From Mobula hypostoma (taxonomy: Eukaryota): a stretch of DNA of 64,000 nt. The notes beneath the pieces are model-generated. The model was not told the DNA's origin, ran no database searches, and saw only the letters and a program-made list of their open reading frames with translations. The stretch is taken from the NCBI RefSeq assembly GCF_963921235.1, contig NC_086104.1, positions 153,078,001 through 153,142,000 of the forward strand, written 5' to 3'. Of this stretch, positions 17,581 through 55,114 are shown in pieces (the first letter of the stretch is position 1; each line of letters starts with the position of its first letter). The translations under genes and the position numbers were made by a program.

Positions 17581-18569
17581 TATATTTATTGTTCTCTAAT
17601 TATAATTTGTCCTGTGTTTTCCTTCATTACATTGGTAATTAACTTTAAAATTGTTTTATGCATTGTAAAACGCACAGGGCCACACAAGGTCAAAAACTCA
17701 AGGCAGTGATAAGAAACAGGTAGCCTGCAGCTAATTGAAGGGGGCTAAAAGAAGTAAGCAGCCGTGGAAATACTGAAACCTCAATGGGAGATGGGGCTTC
17801 CGGTTAACATGGTGCTGAGCTGCGGTTTCCATCAAGGTCATAGCTCAGGCGTAGTTGTTTTAGTAAGGTTCATAGGGATGATTTTGAGGACAGAGAGCGG
17901 AGTCAGGGATGTGGGGATGTAGAAGTTTGGACTGAGTCTAGCCCTCTGCTCCACATCTGAAGGCCAGTGATGATGTTGCCTTCGGACATCTGGCCCAGAA
18001 AGCACAGTGAACGAAGACCAGCATGGACAAGGGCCTCTCATCAGTTGATCAAGGTCAGCATGTCCCCCATAGGATCAGGTAGATCAGAGGTCCATGTGGG
18101 CCGCAGGTGTGATGGCCCGTGACACCCCCCCCCCCGCCCGCCAAGATACGTGAGTTGACAAGTCCAGAGTTAAAATCCTGAAGGTCGGAGTCCCAGCATT
18201 AGTGAGTCCAGAGTTTGAGGCCTGAGTTCAGGGTCCTGATATGAGAGAATCCAGAATACAAAGCCATAGTTTGAGGTACCATCATTGACAAATCCTGAAG
18301 TCAATCAGAAGTCTGAAGGGTGAGGCCCGACAGCCAGAGCCATGAGTCTGTAATTCCAGTGGGGAAGCCAGAGACCATTGTCTGCAAGTCCGGAGGCTGG
18401 AGGCCCGGCATACCGTGTGATTGGAGGACTGTGTGTTTGTATGTATGAGAGGAAAGAAAGGGGCTAGAGGACATTCCATTTTGGCACTGGCATCTACAGC
18501 CACTTGTGAGCTGCCCTAGCTCATCCTTAGATGTGTTGGTTCTTAATGGAAACAACATATTTCATTGTA

Positions 18570-18795
18570 TCAACACACACAAAAAATGCTGGTGAACGCA
18601 GCAGGCCAGGCAGCATCTATAGGAAGAAGTACAGTCGACGTTTTGAGCCGGGACCCTTCATCAGGACTGATGAAGGGTCCCGGGCTGAAACGTCCACTGT
18701 ACTTCTTCCTATAGATGCTGCCTGGCCTCCTGCATTCAGCACTTTTTGTGTGTGTCACTTGAATTTCCAGCATCTGCAAATTTCCTCTTGTCTGC
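18570..18795. mobile_element. Penelope-terminus-derived palindromic (hairpin) element
   Basis: Inverted arms of about 90 bp centred near 18665; related copy at 54654-54862. Confidence 0.8.
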
Positions 18796-19253
18796 GTTTT
18801 TATTTCATTGTATGTTTCAATGTACAATGTCCAGATAAATAATTCTGAATCTGAGAGCTTATAGATGTCAGAAACTTTATGTACTTTACCTTTTCACAGA
18901 ATATTCAAGGAAATTTGAAATGAAGAGGGGACTTGTGATTTGAAAATAACATATTTAATCAACCAATAAGAAAGTTTCTCCACCTGTACAGTAATAATTC
19001 AAATAATAACAATAATTATTGAATTATTATATTTTTGTATTTGAAAACTCAACACATTATTCTCACGATTAAATAGCTCTAAATGATAAAACGTAAACGT
19101 GAGCAAATATTGCTGCCTGTATATCTCAGTAATTAGAAGATAATTCTATCTACTGTTAATCAAATAAGAGATATTCTGTACTTTGTACATACATACTCTC
19201 TAAACCAACAATTTCTGATTTGTTTTCTAAATAACACAGAGAATTAAAATGCC

Positions 19254-19466
19254 TCATTTAGCTGTGAAGATCGTGATTCTGTTATGGTGTTTCTTCTCAT
19301 CCATTTCAACTGGCTGCTTGTCCCTGTGGGATGTGCTGATGTACCACCCATGATGTAGAGCCGACTCAAACTCAAAGTAATGGCCTGCACCTGAAACCTT
19401 CTTGAAGAAAATGAAGCGAAGCAGGTCAGTGGCACTACTGATATTTTGCAAATTCTGATCCCATTT
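19254..19466 (-). CDS. IL1B: IL1B copy A exon 6 (terminal)
   Basis: KWDQNLQ...LLRFIFFKK...FESALHHGWYIST...TIFTAK*; putative ATTAAA polyA signal at 18954-18959. Confidence 0.94.
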   Translation of the reverse strand, partial: KWDQNLQNISSATDLLRFIFFKKVSGAGHYFEFESALHHGWYISTSHRDKQPVEMDEKKHHNRITIFTAK

Positions 19467-22400
19467 CTGTGAAAATAAATGTCAGAAACGAAGTTAAGTA
19501 CAGTTACATTTCAAATGAGAAAGCTATAAATAGTATTACTCAGGACAGGCTGCCTCCACAGCAGGTGCTGAGCATGTGTTGCTGGGATGAGATTTGTGCC
19601 AGCTGCATGTTTGTAAAGATAGCCCTAACCTTGCCAACCCTTTCAGTATTTAAAGTGTTCAGGCTGGAGAGAATTGGGATCCTCTGCTCTGTTTAAACTT
19701 CTCATTACTTAATTACCTATCAGTTAAAAGTCGCTAACAATTCAGTTTTGAAACTGTTCTGAGTTGGCTGACCTGAATTGGGGAAGGGACATAGTTCTCA
19801 ACATTCCAGGATTGGGGACAAAAGTACAGAGTACTGACCACTGACCTCACAGATTAGGATATTAAGTAAGGATTTAGTTGTGATATCACTCTCCAGTCAA
19901 GAGCGTTCAGTTTCAATGATCAGCTCTGTAGAAATGTATTTTTTTCATCTTATGAGTGAGTGTGTGTGTGTGAGAGAGAGAGAAAGCATTAAACCTATCT
20001 TCTCAATGCTAACTTCTGATTGTGCCGTTTTACTCCTTTTTCCAATAATTTATTCTTTGTTCTCTTCCTTGCCATCAATTCACTTTGATTTTCATGCTAA
20101 CTAGCAAAACCTTGGGTAACATGCAGGGGACAATTAACCCGCAGGTCTTTAGGATACGGACAAAAGTGGAGCACCTGGAGCAAGCACACCTCCAGAATGG
20201 AGAATGGTCAGTACCTGGAATGGAAATTCTTCCGGAGGAAATCAGATATGGTGAAAGGTGTTGGAAGGTTCTCAATGATGTTATGGAACCTGAATATATG
20301 CTGGATATAGGCTAACAAAGCCAGTGTAAGGGAGATGTTTTGAAAAGTGGATAAAATTCTCTGTCACATGTGATTTGCAGAAGGCCCAAGGAAAAGGTGG
20401 AAGCAGAGGCAGATTCTCCAGACAACAATACATGGGACTGTGTACCAGTCAGTTAACCACATGCATACATGATTTCTTACCTCCACTCGCATCCTGGGAT
20501 TGTCCGGTGGCCCTGAGCACGAGAGGAACGTATTCTGATTGTTTATTCCCAGAACAACCGGCAAATAATTTACTTCACCGGAAGTTGCCTTGTAGTACCT
20601 CACATTAAGTGTTACTGTCAACCAAAGGAGGGATATTTTAGCACAGTCATCAAAATACATATATACTCATATCAATAAAAGTGCTGCAATGTGGTAGCTA
20701 CTTTATTTGGAGTTATAACCAAGCTATTCATTGCATCTAAGTAATCTAAGGCCATGAATGGAGCATGACACATTGGGCGGGGCAACTATTCAGACTCCCA
20801 TTCTTACCCATGATTCATTCATAACTTTGTTTAGCTCTATATTCCTATTTCAGCTGGAGAAGCATGCTGATGACAGGGTTAAATAAAATGTCGCAGGCTG
20901 AAGGCAGCGCATTTTTAGAGAGTTAAAGGTATGAGAGGGACATGTGAAAAGCAATTGAAGACATTTCCTATTTTGTGCAATGTTCTTTCCCATTCGTCGT
21001 AACACCTTGAAGAGTTAGATACTTCTGCCAATCTTTCCATATTTTAAGTACAACAAAAAAGTGAGAGCATAAAGTTTACCCACCTTCGTCTGATGGCTGC
21101 TGCAAGAACATGGCCAGGAGCTGGAAGTTCTCTGATAACTTCAGGCATTTGTCTTGTTCATCCCTCACTTGCTGACACTCAGTCTTCATGAACCTGTAGG
21201 AGCTGGGCACCACTTCAGCACCTTCATAGTTGGTGTAAGTGATGGCTTCTGTTGGCACAAATAAGATTAAGTTATTGATCATGGTATATTAACAGAGATT
21301 AAACATAAATGAAATCCCGGACCCAACTATTTCTTTACTATTCCTGGGCATTGTCAGTGTTGGCAAATCTGAGTGTATTGATTTGTAGTATTGGCAGTTC
21401 TGAGTGTATTGATTTGTCGTGGTTATTCTGTTGAACATAGAACATTACAGCACCATATAGGCCTTTCAGCCTATGAAATTGTGATGTCCTTTTAATCTGC
21501 TCTGAGATCAATCTAACCCTTCTGCATAACTCTCCAATTTTTTATATATCATCATCAATGCCTATCTTAGATATTCTTAAACGGTCCTAGTGTATCTGCC
21601 TCTGCCACCACACTTAGCAGTGCATTCCACACATCCACCACTCTTTTATAAAGACCTTACCTCTGACGTTCCTCCTGTACTATCCTCTGATCACCTTAAA
21701 ATTATGCTACCTTGTATGAGCCTTCTCTGCCCTGGGAAATGTTTCTGGCGATCCACTGTCTATTTTATCATCTTGTACATCTCTGTCAGGTCACCTCTCA
21801 TCCTTCTTTGCTTCAAGGAGAAAAGCCTTAGCTTGCTCAACCTTTCTTCATAAGACATGCTTTCCAGTCCAGTCAGTATGCTGTCTCTTTTGGGTTTTTT
21901 TTTTGATAACCCTTCTTCTCAAATCTTTGTGGGAAAGGCACAGTCCTGCATTTTGTAGGAAATCTCATGACAGTGATGAGCATCAGTGAAGGCTCAGTGT
22001 TAACAGAACCACTGGGATCAAGAGCAGATTGCAGGCCTTCACATTGGAACCAGTGCTTCCAATTGTAACTAATCACGACAGACAGAGTAACAATACTGAA
22101 AGGAAAGATCAGCTCACCTTCTACAAGTGCATTGAAGTTTCCAAGCAAATCAGTGTCTCCAAAGCAAGTACTTTCACAGTCCCAGCTGTTTGTGCATGGC
22201 TGCTGCAACTTCCTCTTGAATTTTTCAACTGCAAGAGCCAACATGATGGCTTTCTCCAGTGTCAGCTTTGCAGAACCAGCCGTGCTAATAGATAAGAACT
22301 TTCCCGTGATCTTCAATTGGTAACTGTCTGAATGGTGACGTGCAGTGCTCAGCTCCATCAGACTTGGTGATGTTTTTTGAAATGGGCTCTGCATAATGAG

Positions 22401-23533
22401 AAACCACCATTAAATCTCCCAGTTCAGCTATCATAATAATTTTAGAGGGCCTGATAGCTAGGGTACAGAACAATTGATATCAGGTCCATCCCAAGATCTG
22501 TGGGCTAAACATCAGACAGTGTAAAACTCACAGTTTAAAAGGGTCCCTGACATCATACTTTCCCATCTGGATTCTCTGATACCTCATGGCAATTAAATAT
22601 TTATTGATTCAAACTTGCACTAATTTTAACAATAATATCTTCCCCAAAACTTATTCTGGTATCATATCTATTATTCTTACCTTGACCCAGGGACAAGAAG
22701 TAGGAGATATAATATGACAATCCCCATTGTGCCAGTAACTTAAGGATCTGTAGATGAAAGACTTATTTCAGTCAGTTTATATGGAAAAGGGTAGATCACC
22801 TTCAGTAAGTTATTAACCATACATGAAAATCACAAATTCAAGAGATTCTGCAAATGCTAGAAATCCAGGGCAACACAAACAAAATGCTGGAGGAACTCAG
22901 CAGCTCAGGTTGCATCACCCAGCCTTTCTTTGACATTTTCCCCCTTCTTTTCCAGTCCCGATGAAGGGTCTTGGCCTGAAACTTCAGCTGTTTATTCATT
23001 TCAGTTACTGAAATAATTAGTTACATGTTGCTCTGAATCCTAGGCAATGGAAGTGGGGCCAGTCAGATATAAACCTGCTCCACGTCCACTTGTCTGTAGC
23101 TAGCCTTCACACACTTACAAAATAATATGTCTGGGATCTGGCAGGATGCACTGACCTTTATTTGAAAATTAGAAAAAACAATTCTGAGAAAACCGTAAAT
23201 ATTCTGAATATTGTCACAGTTACCAAATCTGATAATAATCAACTATAAGTAGACTATGCCACGCGTATAACCAATGTTATACTTCCCTTTCTCTAAAATA
23301 CTGCACAGACAATTAAGTCTAAATATTTTCTCCAAATTGTACTCTCATTCTTAATGATAAGAGTACCATTCTGTTGGTTTGGTTTGAGCTGAGATCAGAC
23401 ATATTTAGTAGCTGTAAATATATTCACTGTTCAAAAAGGGCACTAATATGTTTGCACAACTATGTTTTACATACTAAACAAAAAGTGCTGTAGAGAAACC
23501 ATTGGCTCACCTCAGGGATTCACTGTCAGCCAT
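19254..23533 (-). CDS. IL1B: Interleukin-1 beta, copy A (290 aa). Exons 23511-23533, 22681-22747, 22118-22388, 21084-21248, 20481-20614, 19254-19466.
   Basis: All introns are GT-AG with consistent phases; 873-nt open frame. IL-1 family signature-like FESALHHGWYISTSHRDKQPV, VRDEQDKCL, LPVVLGI..FLSC, LLRFIFFK; pro-domain LALAVEKFK. Syntenic with CKAP2L. Confidence 0.93.
20481..20614 (-). CDS. IL1B: IL1B copy A exon 5
   Basis: VTLNVRYYK...LPVVLGINNQNTFLSCSG...RVE; GTAAGA donor. Confidence 0.93.
21084..21248 (-). CDS. IL1B: IL1B copy A exon 4
   Basis: EAITYTNYEGAEVVPSSYRF...VRDEQDKCL...; phase 1-1. Confidence 0.92.
22118..22388 (-). CDS. IL1B: IL1B copy A exon 3 (propeptide)
   Basis: SPFQK...LALAVEKFK...FGDTDLL...LVE; AG/GT boundaries. 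Confidence 0.9.
22681..22747 (-). CDS. IL1B: IL1B copy A exon 2
   Basis: CTACAG acceptor, GTAAGA donor, 67 nt; conserved in copy B. Confidence 0.82.
23511..23533 (-). CDS. IL1B: IL1B copy A exon 1 (MADSESL+AG)
   Basis: Strong Kozak acaATGG; donor GAG|GTGAG; about 110 nt downstream of the TATA-like box. Confidence 0.78.
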
Positions 23534-23639
23534 TGTAATTTTTACAGATCCCGTCTCAGTCCTCGTAATAGCGTAGCTCTCAGATTGTCAGAATAGTACT
23601 GCGTGAGTTCTAATTTTGCTCTGCTGATGATCAGCCTCT

Positions 23640-23870
23640 ATCCCTTATTTAAAGTTCACTGTCCTTGTGTGCTCCTCCTCCAGGGTGTGACACAGTGAGT
23701 GGAAACTTTATGATTACAAAGTTTGGTGAATTAGCCTCTCACTTCCTCACTTGCAGATCTTGCCAAAATTACGTCCTTGTGACATGGAAGTTTGAAAATT
23801 TTTTTTAAAAATCAGAATAATATTACTGAGGTTGCACTGCAAAAGAATTAAAAATGAAATTCCCCTTTCT
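23640..23870 (-). promoter_or_regulatory. IL1B copy A proximal promoter: TATA-like TTTAAATAA (23645-23653), PU.1/ETS GAGGAAGTG (23740-23748), kB-like GGGGAATTTC (23856-23865)
   Basis: The TATA-like and PU.1 motifs recur at equivalent positions in copy B and the pseudogene; the kB-like motif recurs in the pseudogene flank. Confidence 0.6.
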
Positions 23871-25720
23871 TTATGTTTATTTACATTGGTTTGACAGCAA
23901 TTTTCTATCTCAATGTTTTGGAGGCTAAGAATCAAATTGTTTAATGATAATGCTGGAAAATTCATTTTGTAACAAACAGAAAATGTGGTTCTTTGTCCAT
24001 TCTGTTCTATTTCATTTATTAAATGGATTAAGATCAGTTTATTTGTCACATGTACATCGAAACATTCGGTGAAAGGCATCGTTTATGTCAAATCAGATCT
24101 ACCAGGTTTGTGCTGCCATGCTTCCGGTGCCAACGTGGCATGCCCACAAGCCTAACCGTATGTCCTTGGAATGTGAGAGGAAACCAGATACCCAGTGGAA
24201 ACCCATGCGTTCACAAAGAGAACATACCAACTACTTACAGACATTAGCCAGAACAAACTTTCCACCTGTGCACTGATCTGGTGAGCACTTAATCATTTCT
24301 TTCCAGATTTCCAGTTAGCGGAGTATTCTATTTTGTGTTTATGGACTATGTCAAAGGTTGCAGATCAATAAATCAAGATGTGTTATGGATAATTGTGCAT
24401 AGTGGAATTGATGCTTCCATGAGGTGGAAACACAATCAGATCAAAGTCACTGCTATTGTAGTCAAAAATGGAGATTAAGTATTAAATGATCTGAGGAGGC
24501 TATTCAATGGATATTCCCATCCTCAAAGATGGTATGCCTAGGCATTTATAATTACCATCAGACTTTAGTGCCAAGACAGTAATCAATCTCAGCCTCTTCC
24601 TAAAGTCTGAAGCACGACTGAAACTAATCATCAGTCACTTTAAAGAATTGCATTCCAGGAGTAACAGTGATGCCCCTTGATATTGTCAAAAGTCATTGAA
24701 TAGTAGATTGGTCTGTAAAGTAAAGCCCATGTTATTAAGAGGAGAGAGGGAAATTGAATCCAAAATTTGTTATATGGCAGGACACAAAGATAACGATTGT
24801 TGAGTGTGATTGTGATTGGAATTTGTGATGTTCACTGTAGGAGTCTACAGGGTTCAGAACACATTGCTTTGCTGTTTACAATATATATGTTTTAAATAGA
24901 TAGGCACGATCAATTAATCTGCACATGATAGAAAAATTGATTTCTGGAGGAAAGGTTTATACAGCAACAGAATGCAGTTGGTCTGGTCAGTTGTTTAGAA
25001 AAGTGATTTCCAGAGAAAAGATTTATACTGCAACAAGATGTAAATGGTCTGGTCATTTGGTCAGAAAAGTGGAAACAGGATTTTAACTATGGAAATAATT
25101 AATCAAGGTTTCTTTGGATCCAAAAGCGTTGTCTACAAGGATGGTGCCAGATTGTTAAGATTTGTAAAAAAAAAGACGGTACTCTGACGGTTGATCATGA
25201 TAAGATAAACAAATCCTTTCAGGAATTTTATACTTCTTTATATCAATCAGAATTTCCTGATGACCCCACTATAATGCACGAATTTTTGAAGACATTGAAT
25301 ATTCCAAAATTACCACCCAATGAACGTTTAGAACTAGATGTACCTATTACGGTAGAAGAAATAAAGAATGCTATATCCACCATGAATTCAGGTAAAGCAC
25401 CTGGTCCAGACAGTTATACAGTAGAATTTTTAAAATCCTTTTCTACTATACTTTCTCCTTGGTTATGTAGAATCTTTAAGGATGCAGTATTTATAGGTAA
25501 ATTACCACAATCTATTTATCGAGCTTCTATTTCCCTAATTCTTATAAAAGATAGGGATCCTACTGAATGTGCATCTTATTGGCCTATATCTTTGCTGAAT
25601 GTGGATTCTAAGATTTTTTTCTAAAATATTGGCAACGAGACTGGAGAATGTATTGCCTCAAATTATTTCTGTTGATCAGACTGGATTTATTAAAAATCGT
25701 TACTCCTTTAAGATTAGGAG

Positions 25721-28828: not shown

Positions 28829-31619
28829 TAATATATTGATTCAGCCTTGTTTTGTTCTGTTTGGAGTTTTTTTTGGGTCTAGTAATTTATTTTTTTTCTT
28901 CGCTTTTTTTGTTGTTTTGGAATTTTTCTTTGTGATATCCTTTTCTTTTTATTTCTTTTTTCTTCATGATTAATTATATCAAGAGTTTGGAAGTCTATTA
29001 CACTTGTATTATTTGTAGTTTCTTTTATATATGTTTATTACCAATAATGTAACTCCAATCTCTTTGTATCACTATTGTTATTATGTTTATGAACTTGAAA
29101 ACTAATAAAAAGATTTAAAAAAGAAAGAAAGTAGAAGGATGGTGGAAGTAGATTCAATAACAGGACTTATTTTCAATGGAAAATTTGGTAAAATCTTGAA
29201 AGAAAATATGCAAATATGCATGCATGTTATGGTGAAAGAACAGTCAAATGTGACTACTGTAATGTTCTTTCAGATGGGTGGAACCTCAAATGATGTCATA
29301 TAATTCTTTTTCCTTCCCTTCCCTATAGTCTTACTCTGAAGACAAAACAAGAAAAGAATTGACGCACTGGTTAACAGAGGGTAGAACTGAACTGTTGGGT
29401 CAAATATGTTAACACATAATATTCCCTCAGGTGCACATTCACGTTTTCAAAACCTGGAAAGGTATCCTACTTTCTAACAGATGGGATTCCATCTTAATAA
29501 ACACAAGCAAAAGTCCGCACCCATTTATTCTTTCAAAGTCATTTAACACATAGGGGCTGGTACCAATCATCAGCTTTGGACTTAGTCCCAGAACTTGCAT
29601 GCCAAGGTTTCATCAGAGATGTTTTTGTGTGAGACAAAAGTGAGCAATGTAAGCCAATCTCATCATGAGGGAAAGTTTCAGAAAATTGTAACTTGACAGC
29701 TCACTGAGGTCTCAGTCTAAAATGTCGACTGTACTCATTTCCATAGATGCTGCCTGGCCTGCTGAGTTCCTCCAGCATTTTGTGTGTGTTGCTTGGTTTT
29801 CCAGCATCTGCAGATTTTCTCTTGTTTGTTACTAAGGTCAGTGACTGCAGTTACTTGAAACATTCCCAGTTGTCAATGCAAACCAGAATACCTGTGGTCA
29901 GTTGTACTCTATATACAGGACAATGCTGAGACTGAGGTTGACAAGGCAATGAAATAAAACAGAGGCACTGGCATACAGTGATTCTTACAGTTTCCTTCCC
30001 AATTTACAGAGACTCAGATTAAGTAGATGCTGACGTACTCCACTTCACTGATGCCATCCGATTCCTAAATGGACATTGAACCCTTGGACACTACCTCACT
30101 TTTTTTTAATATACAGTATTTCTGTTTTTATCACATTTTTAATATCTATTCAATACATGTAACTGATTTACTTGTTTATTTATTATTATTTATTTGTTTT
30201 ATTATTTTTTTCTCTTTCTGCTAGATTATGTATTGCATTGAACTGCTGCTGCTAAGTTAACAAATTTCAAGTCACATGCCGGTGATAATAAACCTGATTC
30301 TGATTCTGACATCGTACAGGTGCTTGAGCATGTGTTGCTGGGTTGAGATTTGTGCTAGCTGCATGTTTGTAGAGTTACCCCTAACCTTGCCAATCTTTCT
30401 TCAGTGTTCATTTTGTGAGAGAGAGGGTGACCATTCAGCCTATTTCGTGAATGCTAGCTTTTCTTGGTTCCATTGTCCCCCATTTTCCTGTAATCTATTC
30501 TCTGTTCTGTTCCTTGCCATCAATTCCTTTCAATTCTCCTGGGTAACATGACCAATTAACCTGCATGTCTTTGGGATATGGAGGAATATGGAGCATAGTC
30601 ATTAAAACATGTAACTACTCAAATCGATAACAATTTAGTTTTACTGGGTAGCTAATTTATTTGGAGTTATAACTGAGCTACTCATTGGGTCAAAGTTAAC
30701 CGAGGTAAAAACTGGACTATGACAAATTGTTCATCTACACATCAGCGCAGGACAGAACAACTTTTCGGACTCCCATTCCCACTCATCATCCAGTTACCTG
30801 CAGACATTCATTATTTTTCTGAGCTTTACATGCCTATCCCTGTTCGAGTAGATTGATAAAACCACAATGGAAACTCAAAGCCTCAGCTCAGAGGCAGCAT
30901 GTCCAGGGAGGTAGGGAAGGGTGAAAAAGGAAATGAAGAGAATTCCACTTCCTGTGAAGTGTTCTCCCTGTTCACCATAACAGCTTCAAGATTTAGATAC
31001 TTCTGCCAATTTTCTCTTATTTTAAATGCAGCAGAAAAGAGGGGTGTAAGGTTTACCTACCTTCATCTGATGGCTGCTGCATGAACATGGCTAGGTACTA
31101 GAGGGACTCGGATAAATCAGGCATTTGTATTCTTCATCCCTCACTCACTGACACTCACTCTTCATGAATCTGTAAGAAGTGGGCACCATCTTCATCACTG
31201 GTGTAGTTGATGCCTTCTGTTAGCACAAATCAGAATGAATTATTTATCATGGTAAAGTACAGTTTAAACAGGAATAAAATATTGGACTGTAATGTTTCTT
31301 TAATATTCTCCTATAGTGTCCTTTAATATTCTTATGTGCAAAGGATGGTCATAAGAGCTGTCTGTGAGTTTCTAATGTTTCTGTACTGACAAACAGCCTC
31401 CATACTTATTTAACGTGCACTGGACTCCATATGCTCCTCTCTCCTGGGTGTGCCACTGTGTAAATTTTATGATTGCGCAGTCGTTTGGTGAACTTTCCTC
31501 TCACTTCCTCCATTTGCAGATCTTTCCAAAGATTACACTGGTGACATGGAAATTTGTAAGTTTGAAAATCCGAATTATTTCACTGATAAGAGAAAATCTA
31601 TAGATACTGGAAATCAAAG

Positions 31620-36840: not shown

Positions 36841-38110
36841 ATGAAAATCTGTTAACTCTGCTTCTCGTCCCATAGATGCTGCCTGACCCTGTGATCCTCT
36901 CCAGCATTTTCTATTTATGTTTCTAAGAATCTAAAGATATTTGCTTTTCTCTCTTTGATGCAAAAAAAGACGTTGTACTTCGCTTCAAACCTATTTTCCA
37001 CACAATGTGCTTTCAATGCTGGAGCTGTGTGCACTAACTTCTAACGAGTTGTTCTGGAATCCGCTCATTCATCCGATTAAACTGCATCAGCAGGTTCAAG
37101 TGTTCACTTTAAATGGCAATATGTCCACCTGTATCATTGGCCTATCTAAGTCTTCAAAGTTCACTACACACTCAAGTTTGTGTTCTTGTACATTTTGAAA
37201 TTGTTCCCTTTATTTAAGAAACCTTACTCTTTCAAGGTTTGACATTGTAAGTAACTATGAGGGAGAATATTTGCTTGGCTTGACGTGCAAAGATGTACCT
37301 CGGATGGACAACCAAAATGTTGTATTTATGATGGTTGGCTATATTTAACTAACATCACTGCAAGGTATGTTAGCTATTCACTTATTGTTCTCTAGTTATA
37401 AATTGTCTTGCCCTTTCCTTCATTACTCTAGTGATTAACTTTAACCATGCTTCCTTTATGCTCTGTAAAATGAGCTGGGCCACCCAAGGCCAAAAGCTCA
37501 AGGCAATGATAAGAAACGTAGCCAGCAGCTAATTAAAGGGGGCAAAAATAAACAAGTGGCTGTGGAAATACTGAAGCATCATTTGCCAATGAGAGATGGG
37601 GCTTCTGTACTTGCAAACCCTCCCCCCCACCAGATCAGAGGTCCATGTGGGCAGGAGGTTTGAAGGTCGGTGATCTTTGAGATATGAGAGTCAGCAAGGC
37701 CAGAGTTAAAGTCCTGAAGTCTACAGTCCCAACATCTGTGAGGCAGGTGCTTGAGGCCTGAATTCGGGGTCCTGTCATCAGCATCCAGAGTACAAAGCTT
37801 TTGTTTGAGGTACCATCATTGACAAATCATGGGATTGATACTGATGATCAAAGCCTGAAAGTCTGGAGGACTGTGTGCGAGTGTGTGCAAGGGAGGGAAG
37901 GAAGTGGCTTGTGGGCATGTTATGTTTGTGCTGGAATGTATGGCGACACCTGGGGGCTGCCCAGCTTGTCATTAAGTGTGATTTGGTGTGTTGGCGCTTA
38001 ATGGATACCACGTATTTTAATTTACATACAATAAATCAGTCTGAATCTGAGAATATTAAGGTAATATGAAAAGTGAAGAGGAGAACTTGTTATTTGAAAA
38101 TAATATATTT

Positions 38111-38417
38111 AATCAATCAATGAGAAGGTTTCTCCTCCAGTACAACAATAATTTAAATAATAACAATAAATATAGAAATATCATAATTCTGAATTCCAAA
38201 ACTCAGCACACTTTTTTCACCAATAAATAACTCCAAATGATAAAACTTAAATGCAAGCAAATATATAATCAACAAACAAGGTTTCTCCTCCAGTACAGCA
38301 ATAATTTAAATAATAACAATAAATATAGAAATATCATAATTCTGAGTTCCAAAACTCAGCATACCTTTTTCACCAATAAATAACTCCAAATGATAAAACA
38401 TAAGAGCAAGCAAATAT
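38111..38417 (-). repeat. About 153-bp tandem duplication in the IL1B copy B 3'UTR, carrying AU-rich elements
   Basis: gtttctcctccag begins at 38128 and again at 38281. Each unit has TTATTTATT and TTATTTAAA on the mRNA strand. Confidence 0.9.
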
Positions 38418-38560
38418 TGCTGCCTATACATATCAATAATTAGAAGACAGTTCTATCAACTATTAATCATATAAGAGATTCCCTGTACTTAGTACATACA
38501 TACGCACTAAACCAACAATTTCTGATTTGAGTTCTGAACAGTACAGAGACTTAAAATGCC

Positions 38561-38773
38561 TCATTTAGCTGTGAAGATAGTGATTCTCTTGTGGTGTTCC
38601 TTCACGTCCATTTCAACCGGCTGCCTGTTCCTGTGGGATGTGCTGATGTACCACCCACGGTACAGAGCCGATTCAAACTCAAAGTAATGGCCTGCACCTA
38701 AAACCTTCTTGAAGAACACGAAGCGAAGCAGGTCAGTGGCACTACTGATACTTTGCAAATTCTGATCCCATTT
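38561..38773 (-). CDS. IL1B: IL1B copy B exon 6 (terminal)
   Basis: LLRFVFFKK...FESALYRGWYIST...TIFTAK*; putative ATTAAA at 38108-38113. Confidence 0.94.
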   Translation of the reverse strand, partial: KWDQNLQSISSATDLLRFVFFKKVLGAGHYFEFESALYRGWYISTSHRNRQPVEMDVKEHHKRITIFTAK

Positions 38774-41700
38774 CTGAGCAAAGAAATGACAGAAACAAAG
38801 TTAAGTACAGTTACATTTTAAATGACAAAACTGTAAATGATATTACTCAGGACAGGTTGGCTTCCACATAGCAGATGTCTGAGCATGTGTTGCTGGGATG
38901 GGATTTGTGCCAGCTGCATGTTTGTAAAGACAGTCCTAACCTTGCCAACCCTTTCAGCAGTCAAAGTGTTCGTGAGGAGTTCCAGTCTGGAGAGCAATGG
39001 TATGCTTTGCTCTGTTTGAACTTCTCATGGCTTAATTATCTATAATCCATAAATTGCTAACAATTCAGTTTTGAAACTGTTCTGAGTTGGCTGACCTGAA
39101 TTGGGGAGGGACGTAGATCTCAATATTCCAGGACTGGGGACAAAAGTACAGAGTACTGACCACTGACCTCACAGATTAGGATATTAAGTGAGGATTTAGT
39201 TGTGAAATCACTCTTCAGTCAAGAACTTTCAGTTTCAATGATCAGATCTGTAGAAAATGTATTTTTTTCCATTTAGAGAGAGAGAGCTTTCAGTCTTTCT
39301 CAATGCTAGCTTTTGATTGTGCCATTTTACCCATTTTTCCAAAAATTTATTCTTTGTTCTGTTCCTTGCCATCAATTCACTTTGATTTTCCTGCTATCCA
39401 GTAACACCCTGGGTAACATGCAGAGGACAATTAATCTGCACATCTTTGGGATATGGAGGAAATTGGAGCACCTGGAGCAAGCACACATCCAAACTGGAGA
39501 ATGGCCAGTACCCTGGAAAGGAAATTCTTCAGGAAGAATTTGGATATGGTGAAAGGTGTTGGAAGGTTTCTCCCTGCGGTTATGGAACCTTAAAAAATGC
39601 TGGATATAGGCTAACCAAGCTATTGTAAGGGACACATTTCGAAAAGTGGATCAAATTCTGTCACATGCGATTTGCAGAAAGCTCAAGGAAAAGGTGGAAG
39701 CAGAGGCAGCTTCTCCAGACAACAACATGGGACTGTGTACCAGTCAGTTAACCACGTGCATACATGATTTCTTACCTCCACCTGCATCCTGGGATTGTCC
39801 GGTGGCCCTGAGCACGAGAGGAACATATTCTGATTGTTTATTCCCAGAACAACTGGCAAGTAATTTACTTCACCAGCAGTTGCCTTGTAGTACCTCACAT
39901 TCAGCATTACTGTCAACCAAAGGAGGGATATTTTAGCACAGTCATCAAAACACATATATGCTCATATCAATAAAAGTGCTGCAATTTGATAGCTACTTTA
40001 TCTGGAGTTATAACCAAGCCATTCATTGGATCTAAGTTAACCGTGGAAACAACTGGAGCATGACACATTGGTGCAAGACAGAACTATTCGGACTCCCATT
40101 CCTACCCATAATTGATTCATAGCTTTGCTTAGCCCTATATTCCTATTTCAGCTGGAGAAGCATGCTGATAACAAGGTTAAATAAAATGTCACAGCCTGAA
40201 GGCAGCACATGTTTAGGGAGTTAAAGGTATGAAAGGGACATGTGAAAAGCAATTGAAGCCATTTCCTCTTCTGTGCGATGTTCTATCCCATTCGTCATAA
40301 CACCTTGAAGATTTAGATACTTCTGCCAATCTTTCCATATTTTAAGTACAACAGAAAAGTGGGAGCATAAAGTTTACCCACCTTCGTCTGATGGCTGCTG
40401 CAAGAACATGGCCAGGAGCTGGAGATTCTCTGATAACTTCAGGCATTTGTCTTGTTCATCCCTCACTTGCTGACACTCAGTCTTCATGAACCTGTAGGAG
40501 CTGGGCACCACTTCAGCATCTTCATAGTTGGTGTAAGTGATGGCTTCTGTTGGCACAAATAAGATTAAGTTATTGATCATGGTATATTAACAGAGATTAA
40601 ACATAAATGAAATCCCTGACCCAACTATTTCTTTACTATTCCTGGGCATTGTCAGTGTTGGCAAATCTGAGTGTATTGATTTGTAGTATTGGCAACTCTG
40701 AGTGTATTGATTTGTTGTGGTTATTCTGTTAAATGTAGAACATTACAGCACCATATAGGCCCTTCAGCCCATGAAATTGTGATGTCCTTTTAACCTATTC
40801 TAAGATCAATCCAACCTTTCTCTCCTGCAAAACTCTGCATTTTTTAATATATCATTCATGCCTATCTTAGATGTTCTTAAATGGTCCTAGTGTATCTGCC
40901 TCTGCCACACACTTGGCAGTGTGTTCCACGTACCCACCACTCTTTTATAAAGACCTTACCTCTGACATTCCTCCAGTACTTTTCTCTGATCACCTTAAGA
41001 TTATGCTACCTTGTATTAGCCTTTTCTGCCCTGGGAAAAGTTTCTAGCCACCCACTGTCTATCGTATCATCTTATGCACCTCTATCAGGTCATCTCGCAT
41101 TCTTTGTCTCATGACAGTGAATGAGCAAAAGTGAAGGCTCAGTGTCAACAGAACCACTGGGATCAGGAGCAGATTGCAGGCCTTCACATTGGAGCCACTG
41201 CTTCCAATTGTAACTAATCACGACAGACAGAGTAACAATACTGAAAGGAAAGATTAGCTCACCTTCTACAAGTGCATTGAAATTTCCAAGCAAGTCAACA
41301 TCTTCAAAGCAAGTACTTTCACAGCCCCAGCTGTCTGTGCATGGCTGCTGCAACTTCTCCTTGAATCTTTCAACAGCAAGGGCCAACATGATGGCTTTCT
41401 CCAGTGTCAGCTTTGCAGAGCCAGTCGTGCTAATGGACGAGGACCTCCCTGTGATCTTCAAGTGGTAACTGTCTGAATGGCGACGTGCAGTGCTCAGCCC
41501 CATTGGTGATGTTTTTTGAAGTGGACTCTGCATAATGAGAAACCACCAATAAATCCCCCAATTCAGCTATCACAATAATTTTAGAGCGCCTGATAGCTAG
41601 GGTACGGAACAATTGATAAGCAGGGAGAAGTCTATCCTAGGATTCGTGGGATAAACATCAGACAGTGTGTAAGACTTGAAACCTCACAAATAAAAATTAA

Positions 41701-42758
41701 TTCTGACATCGTGCTTTTCTGTTGTGATTTTGATACCTCATGGCAATTAAATATTTATTGATTCAAACTTGAAATAATTTTAACAAAAATATCTTCCCCA
41801 AAATCTGTTCTGGTATCATCTTGATAATTCTTACCTTGACCCGGACACAGGAAGTAGGAGATGATATATGACAATCACTGTTGTGCCGGTAACTTAAGGA
41901 TCTGCAGATGAAATAATTGTCTTGGTCAGTTTATATGGAAAAAGATAAAACCACCTTTAGTAAATTATCAACCGCACAAGAAAATCGCAAACACAGGAGA
42001 TTATGCAGATGCTGGAAATCCAGAGCAACACACACAAAATTCTGGAGGAACTCAGCAGCTCAGGGAGCATCACCTAGCCTTCCTTTGGCATCTTCCCCCT
42101 TTCTTTCCAGTCCTGAAGAAGAGTCTTGACTCATAACGTCAACTATTTATTTAATTTCGTACATGAAAATCTCAAAGTTACTGAAATTGTCAGTTATGTG
42201 TTGCTATGAATCCTAGGCAGTGGAAGTGGGGCCAGTCAGATATAACCCTACTCCACATCCACTTGTCTGAAGCAGGCTTTCACACACTTACAAAATCATA
42301 TTTCTGGGCTCAGGCAGGATGCACTGACCTTTCTTTGTAAATTAGAAAAATTATTCTAAGAAAACCTTACAAACTATGAATATTGCCACAGTTAACAAAT
42401 CTGATAATAAGCGACAGGCAAGTTTAATTATTAATATTGTATGGCAGACAGATAACCAATGTTATATTTCCCTTTCACTCTAAAGTACTGCACTGATGAT
42501 TAAGGCTGGGCAATTTCTCCAACCTGTATTCTCATTCTTTATGATAAGAATTTCATTCTTTCGGTTTGGTTTGAGCTCTGGTCAGACATATTTATTAGAT
42601 GCAAATATATACACTATTCAAAATGGGGCACCAGTGTGATTGCATAGTACTGTAAGTTTTAAATGCTAAATAAAATTACAGTAGACAAAACCGTGGGCTT
42701 ACCTTAGAGATTCACTCTCAGCAATTGGGATTTTTACTGATCCAGTCTCGGTCCTCAT
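38561..42758 (-). CDS. IL1B: Interleukin-1 beta, copy B (299 aa). Exons 42703-42758, 41835-41901, 41263-41527, 40382-40546, 39776-39909, 38561-38773.
   Basis: Exon-by-exon paralog of copy A; 900-nt open frame; signature FESALYRGWYISTSHRNRQPV; all splice sites intact. Confidence 0.93.
39776..39909 (-). CDS. IL1B: IL1B copy B exon 5
   Basis: VMLNVRYYK...LPVVLGI...FLSCSG...QVE; 134 nt. Confidence 0.93.
40382..40546 (-). CDS. IL1B: IL1B copy B exon 4
   Basis: EAITYTNYEDAEVVPSSYRF...; 165 nt. Confidence 0.92.
41263..41527 (-). CDS. IL1B: IL1B copy B exon 3
   Basis: SPLQK...LALAVERFK...FEDVDLL...LVE; 6 nt shorter than in copy A. Confidence 0.9.
41835..41901 (-). CDS. IL1B: IL1B copy B exon 2
   Basis: 67 nt, AG/GT, homologous to 22681-22747. 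Confidence 0.82.
42703..42758 (-). CDS. IL1B: IL1B copy B exon 1 (MRTETGSVKIPIAESESL+AG)
   Basis: First ATG after the TATA-like box, in frame; AAG|GTAAG donor. Confidence 0.75.
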
Positions 42759-42854
42759 AATGGCGAAGCTCTCTGAAGTTGTATCTGACCGTCTCAGATT
42801 GTCAGGATATTTCTGTGTGAGTTTCTAAAGTTGCTCTGCTGACGAACAGCCTTT

Positions 42855-43000
42855 GTTCCTTATTTAAAGCTCACTGAACTCACATGCTCCTCCTCTCGGG
42901 TGTGCCACTGTGTTTGGAAATTTTACAATTGCAGTCTTGTTTGGTGAATTATCTGCCCACTTCCTCATCTTGCAGATCTTCCCAAAATTAAGCTCTGGTG
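42855..43000 (-). promoter_or_regulatory. IL1B copy B proximal promoter: TATA-like box (42860-42868), PU.1/ETS site (42958-42966)
   Basis: Homologous to 23640-23790. Confidence 0.6.
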
Positions 43001-44751
43001 GCATAAAAGAGAAAATCTGTAGATGCTGGAAATCCAAGCCACTCACACAAAATGCTGGAGGAAGTCAATAGGCCAGGCAGCATCCATGGAAAAGAGTACA
43101 AACTCTTGCTGAAGGTTCTCAGCCTGAAATGTCGACTGTCCACAACACTAGCTGTATGTCTTTGGAATGTGAGAGGAAACTAGATACCCAGTGGAAACCC
43201 ACGCATTCACGAAGAGAACATACAAACTACTTATAGTCATTAGCCAGAACAAAATTTTCTCCTGTGCACTGATCTGGCGAGCATTTAATCATCTCTTTCC
43301 AGAACTCCAGTTAGTGGAGCATTCTATTTTGTGTTTACAGACTATCTCAAAGCCAAAGTCTGCAGATCAATAATCAAGAATTTATTCATTGTAATTGTGC
43401 ATAGTGGAATTGATGCTTCATGAGGTGGAAACACAATCAGATCAAAGTCACTGCTATTGTGATCAAAAATGGAGATTAAGTATTAAATGGTCTGAGGAGG
43501 CTATTCAATGGATATTCCCATCCTCAAAGATGGTATGCCCAAGCATTCATAATTACCATCAGACTTTAGTACCAAGACAGCAATCAATCTCATCCTCTTC
43601 CTAAAGTCTGAAGCACAACTGAAACTAATCATCAGTCACTTTAAAGAGTTGAATTCCAGGAGTATTGCCCCTTGATATCGTCAAAAGTCGTCAAATAGTA
43701 GATTGGTCTGTAAAATAAAGCCCATGCTCTTAAAGGGAGAGAGGGAAATTAAATCCAAAATTTGTTAAATGGCAGGACACAAAGATAAAGATTGCTGAGT
43801 GTGATTGGAATTTGTGATGTTCACTGTAGGGGTCTACAGGGTTCAGAACACACTGCTTTGCTTTTTACAATATACATGGTTTAAGTAGTAGGCATGATCA
43901 ATTAATTTGCAGATGATAGAAAAATTGATTTCTAGAGGAAAGGTTTATACTGCAACAAGATGTAGATGGTCTGGTCAGCTGGTCAGAAAAGTGGAAACAG
44001 GATTTTATCCATGGAAGTATTTAATCAAGGTTTCTTTGGATCCAAAAGCGTTGTCTAGAAGGATGGTGGAAGTAAATTCAATAACAAAACTTTCAATCAA
44101 AAATTTGATAAAATCTTGAAGGAAAATATACAAATATGCAGGGTTATGGTGAAAGAACAGTCAAATGTGACTACCATAACATTCTTTCATCTGGATGAAA
44201 CTTCAAATGATGTCATATAATTCCTTTTCCTTCCCTTCCCTATAGCCTAACTCTGAAAATAGAACAAAAGAACGGATGTGCAGGTTAACAGAAGGTGGAG
44301 CTAAACTGTTGAGTCAAATATGTTAGCATATAATATTCCCTCAGCTGCCCATTCACGTTTTCAAAGCCCAGAAAGGTATTACTTTCTAACGGATGTGATT
44401 CCATCTTCACTAACACAAGCAAATGTCCACACCCATTTCTTCTTTCAAAGTCAGTTAACACAAAGGGATCAGTATCAATCATCACCTTTGGACTTAGTCC
44501 CAGTACTTGCATGCCAAACTTTCATCATAGATGTTTTTTATGTGAGACAAAACTGAGCAACATAAGCCACTGTCATCTTGAGGGAAAGTTTCAGGAAATT
44601 GTAATACGTCAGTTCACTAAGGTCAGTAACTGCATTCACAAGAAACATTCTAGCTCTCAATGCATACCAGAATGCCTATGGTCAATTGTACTTTATATAC
44701 AGGTTAATGATAACAGATGAGGAGCGTTTGATGGCTGAAGCATTCGGTGTG

Positions 44752-54653: not shown

Positions 54654-54862
54654 CACACATCAAAGTTGCTGGTGAACGCAGCAGGCCAGGCAGCATCCCT
54701 AGGAAGAGGTACAGTCGACGTTTCAGGCCGAGACCCTTCGTCAGGCCTGAAATGTCGACTATACCTTTTCCTAGAGATGCTGCCTGGTCTGCTGCGTTCA
54801 CCAGCACTTTGATGTGTGTTGCTTGAATTTCCAGCATCTGCAGAATTCCTGTTGTTTGTGTT
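54654..54862. mobile_element. Penelope-terminus-derived palindromic element
   Basis: Inverted arms acacacatcaaagttgctggtgaacgcagcag ... ctgctgcgttcaccagcactttgatgtgtgt. Confidence 0.8.
54712..54749 (-). ncRNA. Minimal type I hammerhead ribozyme motif (PLE-type)
   Basis: caggc-CTGACGA-agggtctcggcct-GAAA-CGTC-gactg: intact core, stem II, GUC cleavage triplet, and stem I with one mismatch. Confidence 0.6.
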
Positions 54863-55114
54863 TTAAAAGAAGAGGCATGATCATTTTGCTGGCGGTGTAC
54901 TCCTAGCCTCCCAATAGTCATTTGGAGATAGAAGAGCAGAGATGGAAACATCACAATGCGGTATTATAGTAAGGTTATAGTAGTAGGGGATTTCAGCATC
55001 CCCAATATTAACTGGGATCACTTCAGTGTAAAAGGCATACAGGGGATGGAATTTTTAAAATGTGTCCAGAAGAGCATTTTGAACTAGTGTACTGATAATC
55101 TACTAGAGAACATA

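What the first reader, a model, noticed from the sequence alone, without database searches (positions are those of the whole stretch)
42723..42758. Reciprocal start-codon switch between the IL-1beta paralogs
Seen: copy A starts at ATG 23533 and has ACG exactly 33 nt upstream (23566). Copy B has ATT at the position of A's ATG (42725) and ATG exactly 33 nt upstream (42758), in frame, adding 11 codons (MRTETGSVKIP). Inference: B probably gained the upstream ATG by CpG deamination (ACG>ATG), which allowed loss of the downstream ATG; the reverse order is also possible. Either way this compensation argues that both copies are kept translatable. The ACG in A could also act as a near-cognate start.
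Basis: partly seen in the sequence, partly recalled or inferred. Interest (0 to 1): 0.7.

Follow-up and report, generated by a model that had tools for sequence, protein, structure and literature searches.

The report
Two IL-1beta copies, different start codons
Two neighbouring interleukin-1 beta genes of a devil ray each kept a different one of two start-type codons that their ancestor already had, so the "switch" is two ordinary, separate losses and not a compensating pair.

Summary
On the minus strand, copy A has ACG (23566) and ATG (23533). Copy B has ATG (42758) and ATT (42725), also 33 nt apart and in frame.

The window encodes exactly the two annotated Mobula hypostoma IL-1beta-like proteins: A is 290 aa and B is 299 aa.
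- All 19 other full-length chondrichthyan IL-1beta proteins recovered start M[R/K]T[E/D/Q], which is B's upstream ATG.
- Two skates and the elephant shark have ATG there at DNA level.
- Residue 12 is Met in every other batoid and in several sharks.

So the ancestor had both ATGs. B gained nothing by CpG deamination; A lost ATG1 by a T>C change.

A tree puts the duplication before the Mobula/stingray split. All four A-type genes are annotated from Met12. Stingray B-types still have Met12, and only the two Mobula B genes have Ile12. Met12 was also replaced in at least three shark lineages that keep Met1. The two changes are therefore far apart in time and need no compensation.

Both genes do look functional. 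Each has an intact 6-exon ORF, including a 67-nt exon 2 that the frame requires. dN/dS is 0.31. Spliced contigs cover B from about 69 nt upstream of its ATG. Interest is low.

The parts
42756..42758 (-). Copy B start codon ATG (site 1). It is ancestral and the first AUG of the B transcript.
   Evidence: One search gives the sequence. One search finds no ATG in the 69-nt leader. One search shows the annotated gene span of 4198 nt, which equals 42758..38561. Searches show outgroups with ATG/Met here.
42723..42725 (-). Copy B codon 12, ATT (Ile). It derives from the ancestral ATG (Met12) and is now an internal residue.
   Evidence: skates have ATG. (stingray B-types have Met; both Mobula B have Ile).
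42703..42827 (-). Copy B exon 1: a 69-nt leader plus 18.7 codons. The 5' end is the end of RNA-like contigs, not a mapped transcription start.
   Evidence: X2 record 12 is 650 nt = 28+165+265+67+125. The bin depths 4.55 and 8.1 at contig depth 19.3 give 45+80 nt, which is 42703-42827. X1 gives the same end.
42858..42868 (-). TATA-like box TTTAAATAAGG of copy B. The same motif is found in A, in the truncated copy C and in both skates.
42774..42795 (-). A 22-nt leader segment present in B and in both skates but deleted in A.
41835..41901 (-). Copy B exon 2 (67 nt, phase 2 to 0). It is needed to keep the exon-1 ATG in frame.
   Evidence: ctgcag|...|gtaaga, open frame, homologous exon in A. (the 67-nt remainder of record 12). 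(the ORF equals P0035).
41263..41527 (-). Copy B exon 3 (pro-domain).
   Evidence: joint 40546>41263 and pieces 41263-41527/41529..
40382..40546 (-). Copy B exon 4.
   Evidence: joints 39909>40382 and 40546>41263 in X1, X2 and X4..
39776..39909 (-). Copy B exon 5.
38561..38773 (-). Copy B exon 6, coding part with the TGA stop.
   Evidence: (PF00340 at residues 182-294).
23564..23566 (-). Copy A site 1, ACG. It derives from the ancestral ATG by T>C and now lies in the 5' leader.
23531..23533 (-). Copy A start codon ATG. This is the ancestral Met12, in context acaATGg, and the first ATG of the predicted leader.
   Evidence: A from this ATG equals P0034.
23511..23625 (-). Copy A exon 1. The 5' end is only estimated by homology with B.
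   Evidence: One search shows its words are held by three small RNA-like runs of the same study.
22681..22747 (-). Copy A exon 2 (67 nt).
22118..22388 (-). Copy A exon 3.
21084..21248 (-). Copy A exon 4.
20481..20614 (-). Copy A exon 5.
19254..19466 (-). Copy A exon 6, coding part with the stop.

Best explanation
The chondrichthyan IL-1beta gene has long carried two in-frame ATGs in its first exon: codon 1 (MRTE...) and, in batoids and many sharks, codon 12 (...IPMAESE).

The gene was duplicated in tandem in a stingray-order ancestor, before devil rays and whiptail stingrays split.
- **A-type copy:** ATG1 mutated to ACG (T>C), and 22 nt of leader were deleted. Scanning ribosomes now start at the pre-existing ATG12, which has a strong context (acaATGg). 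This gives a pro-IL-1beta 11 residues shorter.
- **B-type copy:** ATG1 was kept. Much later, in the Mobula lineage only, internal Met12 became Ile (ATG>ATT). This substitution is harmless as long as ATG1 is there, and it has happened repeatedly in sharks.

The reciprocal look is thus the sum of two independent events, and neither compensates for the other. Both genes remain intact and expressed, and both are already annotated with these starts.

**Shown:** the sequence states, the exon structure, the identity to the annotated proteins, the outgroup states, and the A-type and B-type clades.

**Inferred:** that stingray and M. birostris A-types also lack ATG1 at DNA level (from their annotated 290-aa products); which AUG ribosomes actually use (scanning rule); and the 5' end of the transcripts.
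For: - **Sequence states:**
- **Gene structure:** one search found the 67-nt exon 2. One search found canonical splice sites and intact ORFs of 290/301 and 299 codons.
- **Identity to annotation:** A from ATG12 equals P0034 and B equals P0035, both Mobula hypostoma.
- **Ancestral ATG1:** the N-termini of sharks, sawfish, skates, electric ray, stingray B-types and Callorhinchus all begin M[RK]T[EDQ]. At DNA level, site 1 is ATG in Amblyraja, Rhinoraja and Callorhinchus.
- **Ancestral ATG12:** site 12 is ATG in both skates, and the 22-nt leader segment is present in B and the skates but not in A.
- **Tree:** the A-type clade (Mobula x2, Hypanus, Hemitrygon) has support 98/94. The B-type clade has 93/87. 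Both sit inside a 100/99 stingray-order clade, with Pristis, Narcine and skates outside.
- **Timing:** all four A-types are 290 aa from Met12. Hypanus and Hemitrygon B-types have KIPMAESE, and both Mobula B have KIPIAESE.
- **Met12 is replaceable:** it is replaced in Scyliorhinus (T), orectolobiforms (A/T) and Heptranchias (I), all of which keep Met1.
- **First AUG:** no upstream ATG lies in either leader.
- **Selection:** A versus B has dN/dS 0.31 and dS 0.21.
- **Expression of B:** spliced contigs in RNA-like runs have zero mismatches to B. One 650-nt contig has a length that closes exactly as exon 1 (125 nt, from 42827) + 67 + 265 + 165 + 28.
- **Expression of A:** A's exon-1 words are held by three small runs of that study.
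Against: - DNA of the A-type orthologues (M. birostris, Hypanus, Hemitrygon) could not be fetched. A single old loss of ATG1 therefore rests on the annotated protein lengths and on parsimony. Independent losses, or spread of the state by gene conversion between tandem copies, are not excluded.
- The B-type clade has only moderate support (93/87).
- Start-codon use is inferred from the scanning rule, not measured.
- The runs are only guessed to be RNA. Contigs cannot show a true 5' end.
- The exon-1 and exon-2 pieces of record 12 were not printed. I deduced them from length and depth.
Confidence: 0.85

Rival explanations
1. Partition of dual initiation (a duplication-degeneration-complementation reading). 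The ancestral mRNA made two pro-IL-1beta forms by leaky scanning, from ATG1 (A at -3 but A at +4) and from ATG12 (A at -3, G at +4). In Mobula each paralogue now makes only one of them, so both copies are needed.
For: Both ATGs are ancestral and 33 nt apart, and ATG12 has the better context. The losses are complementary in Mobula. MRTE is conserved from chimaera to rays, which suggests the long N-terminus matters.
Against: Stingray B-types keep both ATGs although their A-types already lack ATG1, so retention of both copies did not depend on complementary loss. Met12 was replaced in at least three shark lineages with a single known gene type, so the short form is dispensable there. No data show that ATG12 was ever used while ATG1 was present. 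The 11 residues lie in a pro-peptide.
Confidence: 0.1
2. Copy A still makes some long form by near-cognate initiation at ACG 23566. This would preserve the conserved (M)RTETGSVKI N-terminus.
For: ACG has A at -3. The frame between ACG and ATG is open, and the peptide differs from B's in one residue only. Codons 2-11 show 4 synonymous differences and 1 non-synonymous difference between A and B.
Against: Polarised with the skates, two of the synonymous changes fell on the B lineage. A itself carries the start change, one non-synonymous change (CCA>ACA) and one or two third-position changes in 33 nt. That is roughly the neutral rate, to be compared with 11-19% A/B intron divergence. My rough binomial test on the counts, allowing for constraint on B only, gives p of about 0.06. 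The +4 base is A, and a strong ATG follows 33 nt downstream.
Confidence: 0.08
3. The ancestor of the pair had ACG upstream and ATG downstream. B gained ATG by CpG deamination and then lost the downstream ATG.
For: ACG>ATG is a frequent CpG transition, and the window's CpG observed/expected ratio is 0.31.
Against: Site 1 is ATG in three outgroup genomes and Met in all 19 full-length non-A-type proteins, including stingray B-types and Callorhinchus. ACG is confined to the A-type.
Confidence: 0.02
4. Exon 1 ATGs are upstream ORFs, and the true start is the conserved ATG in the large pro-domain exon (MGLSTAR in B, MELSTAR in A).
For: If exon 1 is joined directly to the cag| acceptor at 41527 (B) or 22388 (A), the exon-1 frame hits a TGA within 11 codons.
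Against: A 67-nt exon with strong splice sites lies between them in both copies and restores the frame. Contig length arithmetic includes it. The resulting proteins equal the RefSeq models and align over their N-termini with all chondrichthyan orthologues.
Confidence: 0.02

Closest known systems
RefSeq models XP_062913179.1 and XP_062913178.1 (interleukin-1 beta-like, Mobula hypostoma)
   Same: They are identical in sequence to the ORFs I spliced from the window, with the same two start codons: A at 23533 and B at 42758.
   Different: The records carry no statement about the history of the starts. The polarity and timing given here are additions.
Chondrichthyan IL-1beta orthologues (e.g. Amblyraja radiata, Pristis pectinata, Scyliorhinus canicula, Callorhinchus milii)
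   Same: They share the same exon-1 layout in skates: TATA-like box, leader, ATG1, 33 nt, ATG12, and a donor at the same place. They share the MRTE N-terminus and the PF00340 domain.
   Different: They are single-type genes that keep ATG1. Only the stingray-order A-type lacks it.
Differential loss of alternative in-frame start codons between duplicated genes (sub-functionalisation of alternative initiation; mentioned for plant GGPPS families, PMC4034038, found but not read in full)
   Same: Two ancestral in-frame ATGs, with each paralogue keeping one.
   Different: In this case there is no evidence that both starts were used in the ancestor, or that the two forms differ in targeting or function. 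The losses are also not simultaneous.
Mammalian IL1B gene
   Same: It is the same family, with a pro-peptide followed by a C-terminal beta-trefoil, and the last three coding exons are homologous. This comparison is from my own knowledge of the human gene and was not tested here.
   Different: In mammals exon 1 is non-coding and the ATG lies in exon 2. In these rays, exon 1 carries the start codon.

Membership tests
Interleukin-1 family (Pfam PF00340), IL-1beta orthology group of cartilaginous fishes | IL1 domain above Pfam's gathering score | tested here: met
   A scores 60.5 bits and B 65.3 bits against a cut-off of 25, at residues 173-285 and 182-294.
Interleukin-1 family (Pfam PF00340), IL-1beta orthology group of cartilaginous fishes | Groups with proteins named IL-1beta of other elasmobranchs over the full length, pro-domain included | tested here: met
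   Identity is 81-88% to Pristis and Hypanus, and both copies nest in the batoid clade.
Interleukin-1 family (Pfam PF00340), IL-1beta orthology group of cartilaginous fishes | Intact, spliced, transcribed gene | tested here: met
   (canonical sites, open frames). (spliced contigs for B). (A's exon-1 words in RNA-like runs; weaker evidence for A).
Interleukin-1 family (Pfam PF00340), IL-1beta orthology group of cartilaginous fishes | Pro-inflammatory activity and proteolytic maturation | not testable with these tools
Compensatory start-codon switch (gain of a new ATG that permits loss of the old one) | One of the two ATGs is newly gained in the lineage that uses it | tested here: not met
   Both ATGs predate the duplication.
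Compensatory start-codon switch (gain of a new ATG that permits loss of the old one) | Gain and loss occur in the same gene lineage | tested here: not met
   Each copy shows one loss only. A changed ATG1 to ACG, and B changed ATG12 to ATT.
Sub-functionalisation of alternative translation starts after duplication | The ancestor carried both start sites | tested here: met
Sub-functionalisation of alternative translation starts after duplication | Complementary loss in the two paralogues | tested here: met
   This holds in Mobula only. Stingray B-types keep both sites.
Sub-functionalisation of alternative translation starts after duplication | Both starts were used in the ancestor, and the two products differ in function | not testable with these tools
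   This needs ribosome profiling or N-terminal proteomics and functional assays.

The most novel reading that the evidence does not exclude
The ancestral ray IL-1beta mRNA gave a long and a short pro-form by leaky scanning past ATG1. The two Mobula paralogues would then have divided these between them (A short only, B long only). The different N-termini (Met-Arg... versus Ala-Asp... after Met removal) would give the precursors different stability or handling. A minor variant is that A keeps a trickle of long form from ACG.
Probability: 0.1. Interest if true: 0.45.

Novelty: new member of a known kind. Interest (0 to 1): 0.2.

Why it matters
It matters little beyond annotation. The work confirms that the two RefSeq start codons are the first AUGs of their transcripts. 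It shows that exon 1 is coding only through a 67-nt exon 2. It also corrects the direction of change.

It is a cautionary case. Comparing two paralogues alone suggested a gain plus compensation, while outgroups show two unrelated losses. The same reversal of polarity applies to the neighbouring note on the YED|A site.

If dual initiation were real in rays, the pair would offer a natural long-only and short-only contrast for studying the role of the pro-IL-1beta N-terminus. Nothing here shows that it is real.

Tried and rejected
- **Direct exon 1 to pro-domain exon splice.** It is out of frame with the cag| acceptor and would need a poor gag| acceptor. I rejected it once the 67-nt exon was found.
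- **Start at the conserved exon-3 ATG.** Rejected for the same reason.
- **Copy C as a third witness of the ancestral state.** Its exon-1 region is too decayed to align at the two sites.
- **Fetching exon-1 DNA of A-type and B-type orthologues** from M. birostris, Hypanus, Hemitrygon, M. hypostoma and Heterodontus. Pristis is not on record.
- **Testing for protein-level constraint on A's 11 former codons.** The counts are too small: 4 synonymous against 1 non-synonymous, and half of them fall on the B lineage.
- **Literature.** No paper on Mobula IL-1beta was found. One search returned general fish IL-1beta papers, and I did not read them.
- **Third homologous-protein search.** Not spent, because the first two returned only genome-annotation proteins and no transcript-derived fragments.

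Full report
**1. Observation**

Read on the minus strand, copy B has ATG at 42758-42756 and ATT at 42725-42723. Copy A has ACG at 23566-23564 and ATG at 23533-23531. In both copies the two sites are 33 nt apart and in frame, and a GT donor follows 18.7 codons after site 1.

A self-comparison of the window shows that A (17586-25146) and B (37382-44068) are collinear duplicates at 81-89% identity. A truncated third copy lies at about 29700-31563.

**2. Gene structure**

The large pro-domain exon has the acceptor ...ttatgcag|AG. Joined directly to exon 1 (which ends in phase 2), the frame runs into TGA within 11 codons in both copies. That raised the possibility that the exon-1 ATGs are only upstream ORFs.

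A scan for open, splice-flanked exons of suitable length found one 67-nt exon at homologous places in both copies: B 41901-41835 and A 22747-22681. Its sites are strong (ctgcag|/ctacag| acceptor and |gtaaga donor), and it restores the frame.

With six exons, all with canonical sites, the ORFs are intact. B is 299 codons from ATG 42758. A is 290 codons from ATG 23533, or 301 counted from the ACG. Both carry the IL1 domain PF00340 above threshold.

**3. Transcripts**

Logan contigs of four small runs were laid on 37400-43100.
- Spliced joints 39909>40382 and 40546>41263 (GT..AG on the minus strand) occur in three or four runs, so these runs hold RNA.
- In run X2, a 650-nt contig with no mismatch to B covers 28 nt of exon 5, 165 nt of exon 4 and 265 nt of exon 3. 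That leaves 192 nt on its 5' side.
- Bin depths of 4.55 and 8.1 at the contig's depth of 19.3 correspond to 45 + 80 nt, which is 42703-42827. So 125 nt is exon 1, and the remaining 67 nt equals exon 2.
- Run X1 gives the same 5' end.

B transcripts therefore include the ATG at 42758 with a leader of at least 69 nt. The leader begins about 34-41 nt downstream of a TATA-like box (42868-42858).

This is arithmetic on printed depths, because the two pieces themselves were not printed. Contigs also cannot prove a transcription start.

A's exon-1 words are held by three runs of the same study. Neither leader contains an ATG, so each annotated start is the first AUG. For A, this assumes a start site homologous to B's.

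**4. Identity**

A profile-free search with B's last exon found elasmobranch IL-1beta proteins. Two word-indexed searches and a cluster look-up recovered 23 full-length chondrichthyan sequences.

A from ATG 23533 is identical to XP_062913179.1. B is identical to XP_062913178.1. Both are from Mobula hypostoma. The annotated span of B (4198 nt) equals 42758..38561. So the genes and their starts are already in the public annotation.

**5. Polarity**

Site 1:
- Every full-length sequence that is not A-type begins M[R/K]T[E/D/Q]. This covers 19 sequences: sharks of five or more orders, sawfish, electric ray, two skates, four stingray-order B-types, and the chimaera Callorhinchus.
- At DNA level, site 1 is ATG in Amblyraja, Rhinoraja and Callorhinchus.
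- So ACG in A is derived from ATG by T>C. The change created the CpG rather than destroying one.

Site 12:
- Residue 12 is Met in all other batoids and in Heterodontus, Cetorhinus, Mustelus and Pristiophorus.
- Both skates have ATG there, in the context ccaATGg.

A also lost 22 nt of leader that B and the skates keep.

**6. Timing**

A maximum-likelihood tree gives these clades:

| Clade | Members | Support |
|---|---|---|
| Stingray order | A-type and B-type clades together | 100/99 |
| A-type | both Mobula, Hypanus, Hemitrygon | 98/94 |
| B-type | the same four species | 93/87 |

Pristis, Narcine and the skates fall outside the stingray-order clade. The duplication therefore predates the devil ray/whiptail stingray split.

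All four A-types are annotated as 290 aa starting at Met12. The same pipeline extended stingray B-types to a still more upstream ATG (319 aa), so it would probably have used ATG1 in the A-types had it been there. That is inference, because I could not fetch their DNA.

Stingray B-types keep Met12 (KIPMAESE). Only the two Mobula B genes have Ile12. Thus A's loss is probably old and B's change younger. The two events are separate.

Met12 was also replaced in Scyliorhinus, in orectolobiform sharks and in Heptranchias (there also by Ile), all of which keep Met1. It is a freely replaceable internal residue when ATG1 is present.

**7. Is anything being compensated?**

No. A could lose ATG1 because a strong ATG already lay 11 codons downstream in frame. 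B could change Met12 because it initiates at ATG1.

Both copies are nevertheless maintained. dN/dS between A and B is 0.31 with dS 0.21, both types are retained in four species, and both show signs of expression.

**8. Near-cognate ACG**

Codons 2-11 differ between A and B by four synonymous changes and one non-synonymous change. That looks like constraint on a stretch that should be untranslated in A.

Polarising with the skates changes the picture:
- Two synonymous changes (ACT>ACC, ATT>ATC) fall on the coding B lineage.
- The A lineage carries CCA>ACA (Pro>Thr), ACT>ACG, and perhaps one more change.
- That is about 3-4 changes in 33 nt including the start, which is near the neutral level implied by 11-19% A/B intron divergence.

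So there is no support for continued translation from ACG, and no exclusion either.

**9. Verdict**

The most novel reading left open is a partition of dual initiation. It has no direct support, and the stingray B-types, which keep both ATGs, weaken it.

Noticed in passing
window 40505-40546 (copy B) and 21205-21248 (copy A): The YED|A motif that another note (s1-144505) calls a gain in copy B is ancestral. YED[A/T]E is present in Pristis, both skates, Hypanus A and B, Hemitrygon A and B, and M. birostris A and B. Only M. hypostoma copy A has YEGAE. It is therefore a recent loss in A.
   Followed up: partly
window 29700-31563, minus strand: A third IL-1beta copy. It keeps the TATA-like box and promoter homology (31363-31560). 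It lacks the coding part of exon 1 and exons 2-3, and its exon-4 homologue (about 31215-31170) is shortened by about 8 nt and runs into TGA. It is most likely a pseudogene.
   Followed up: partly
window 42774-42795 versus 23581-23582: Copy A's 5' leader has a 22-nt deletion relative to B and to both skates. Its effect on translation is unknown.
   Followed up: no
window 42816-42818 (ACA in B's leader); proteins P0025, P0038: Stingray B-type proteins are annotated as 319 aa, from an extra in-frame ATG 20 codons upstream (MQKYPDNL...). The homologous codon is ACA in Mobula B, ACG in A, and TAG/TGG in skates. Start-type codons come and go repeatedly in this exon. B's whole 69-nt leader is an open frame.
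   Followed up: no
window 41984-42174 and 42939-43100: Very high contig depth (10^4 to 10^5) in all four runs, with many opposite-strand joints. These are transcribed high-copy interspersed repeats in intron 1 and upstream of copy B, and they also match 29730-29828 and 54776-54864.
   Followed up: no
runs X4 and X9 laid on window 38278-41864: Organism B differs from the window by about 1.5% and organism C by about 6-7% across B's exons and introns. They use the same splice joints. They are probably other devil ray or eagle ray species with an expressed B-type gene.
   Followed up: no
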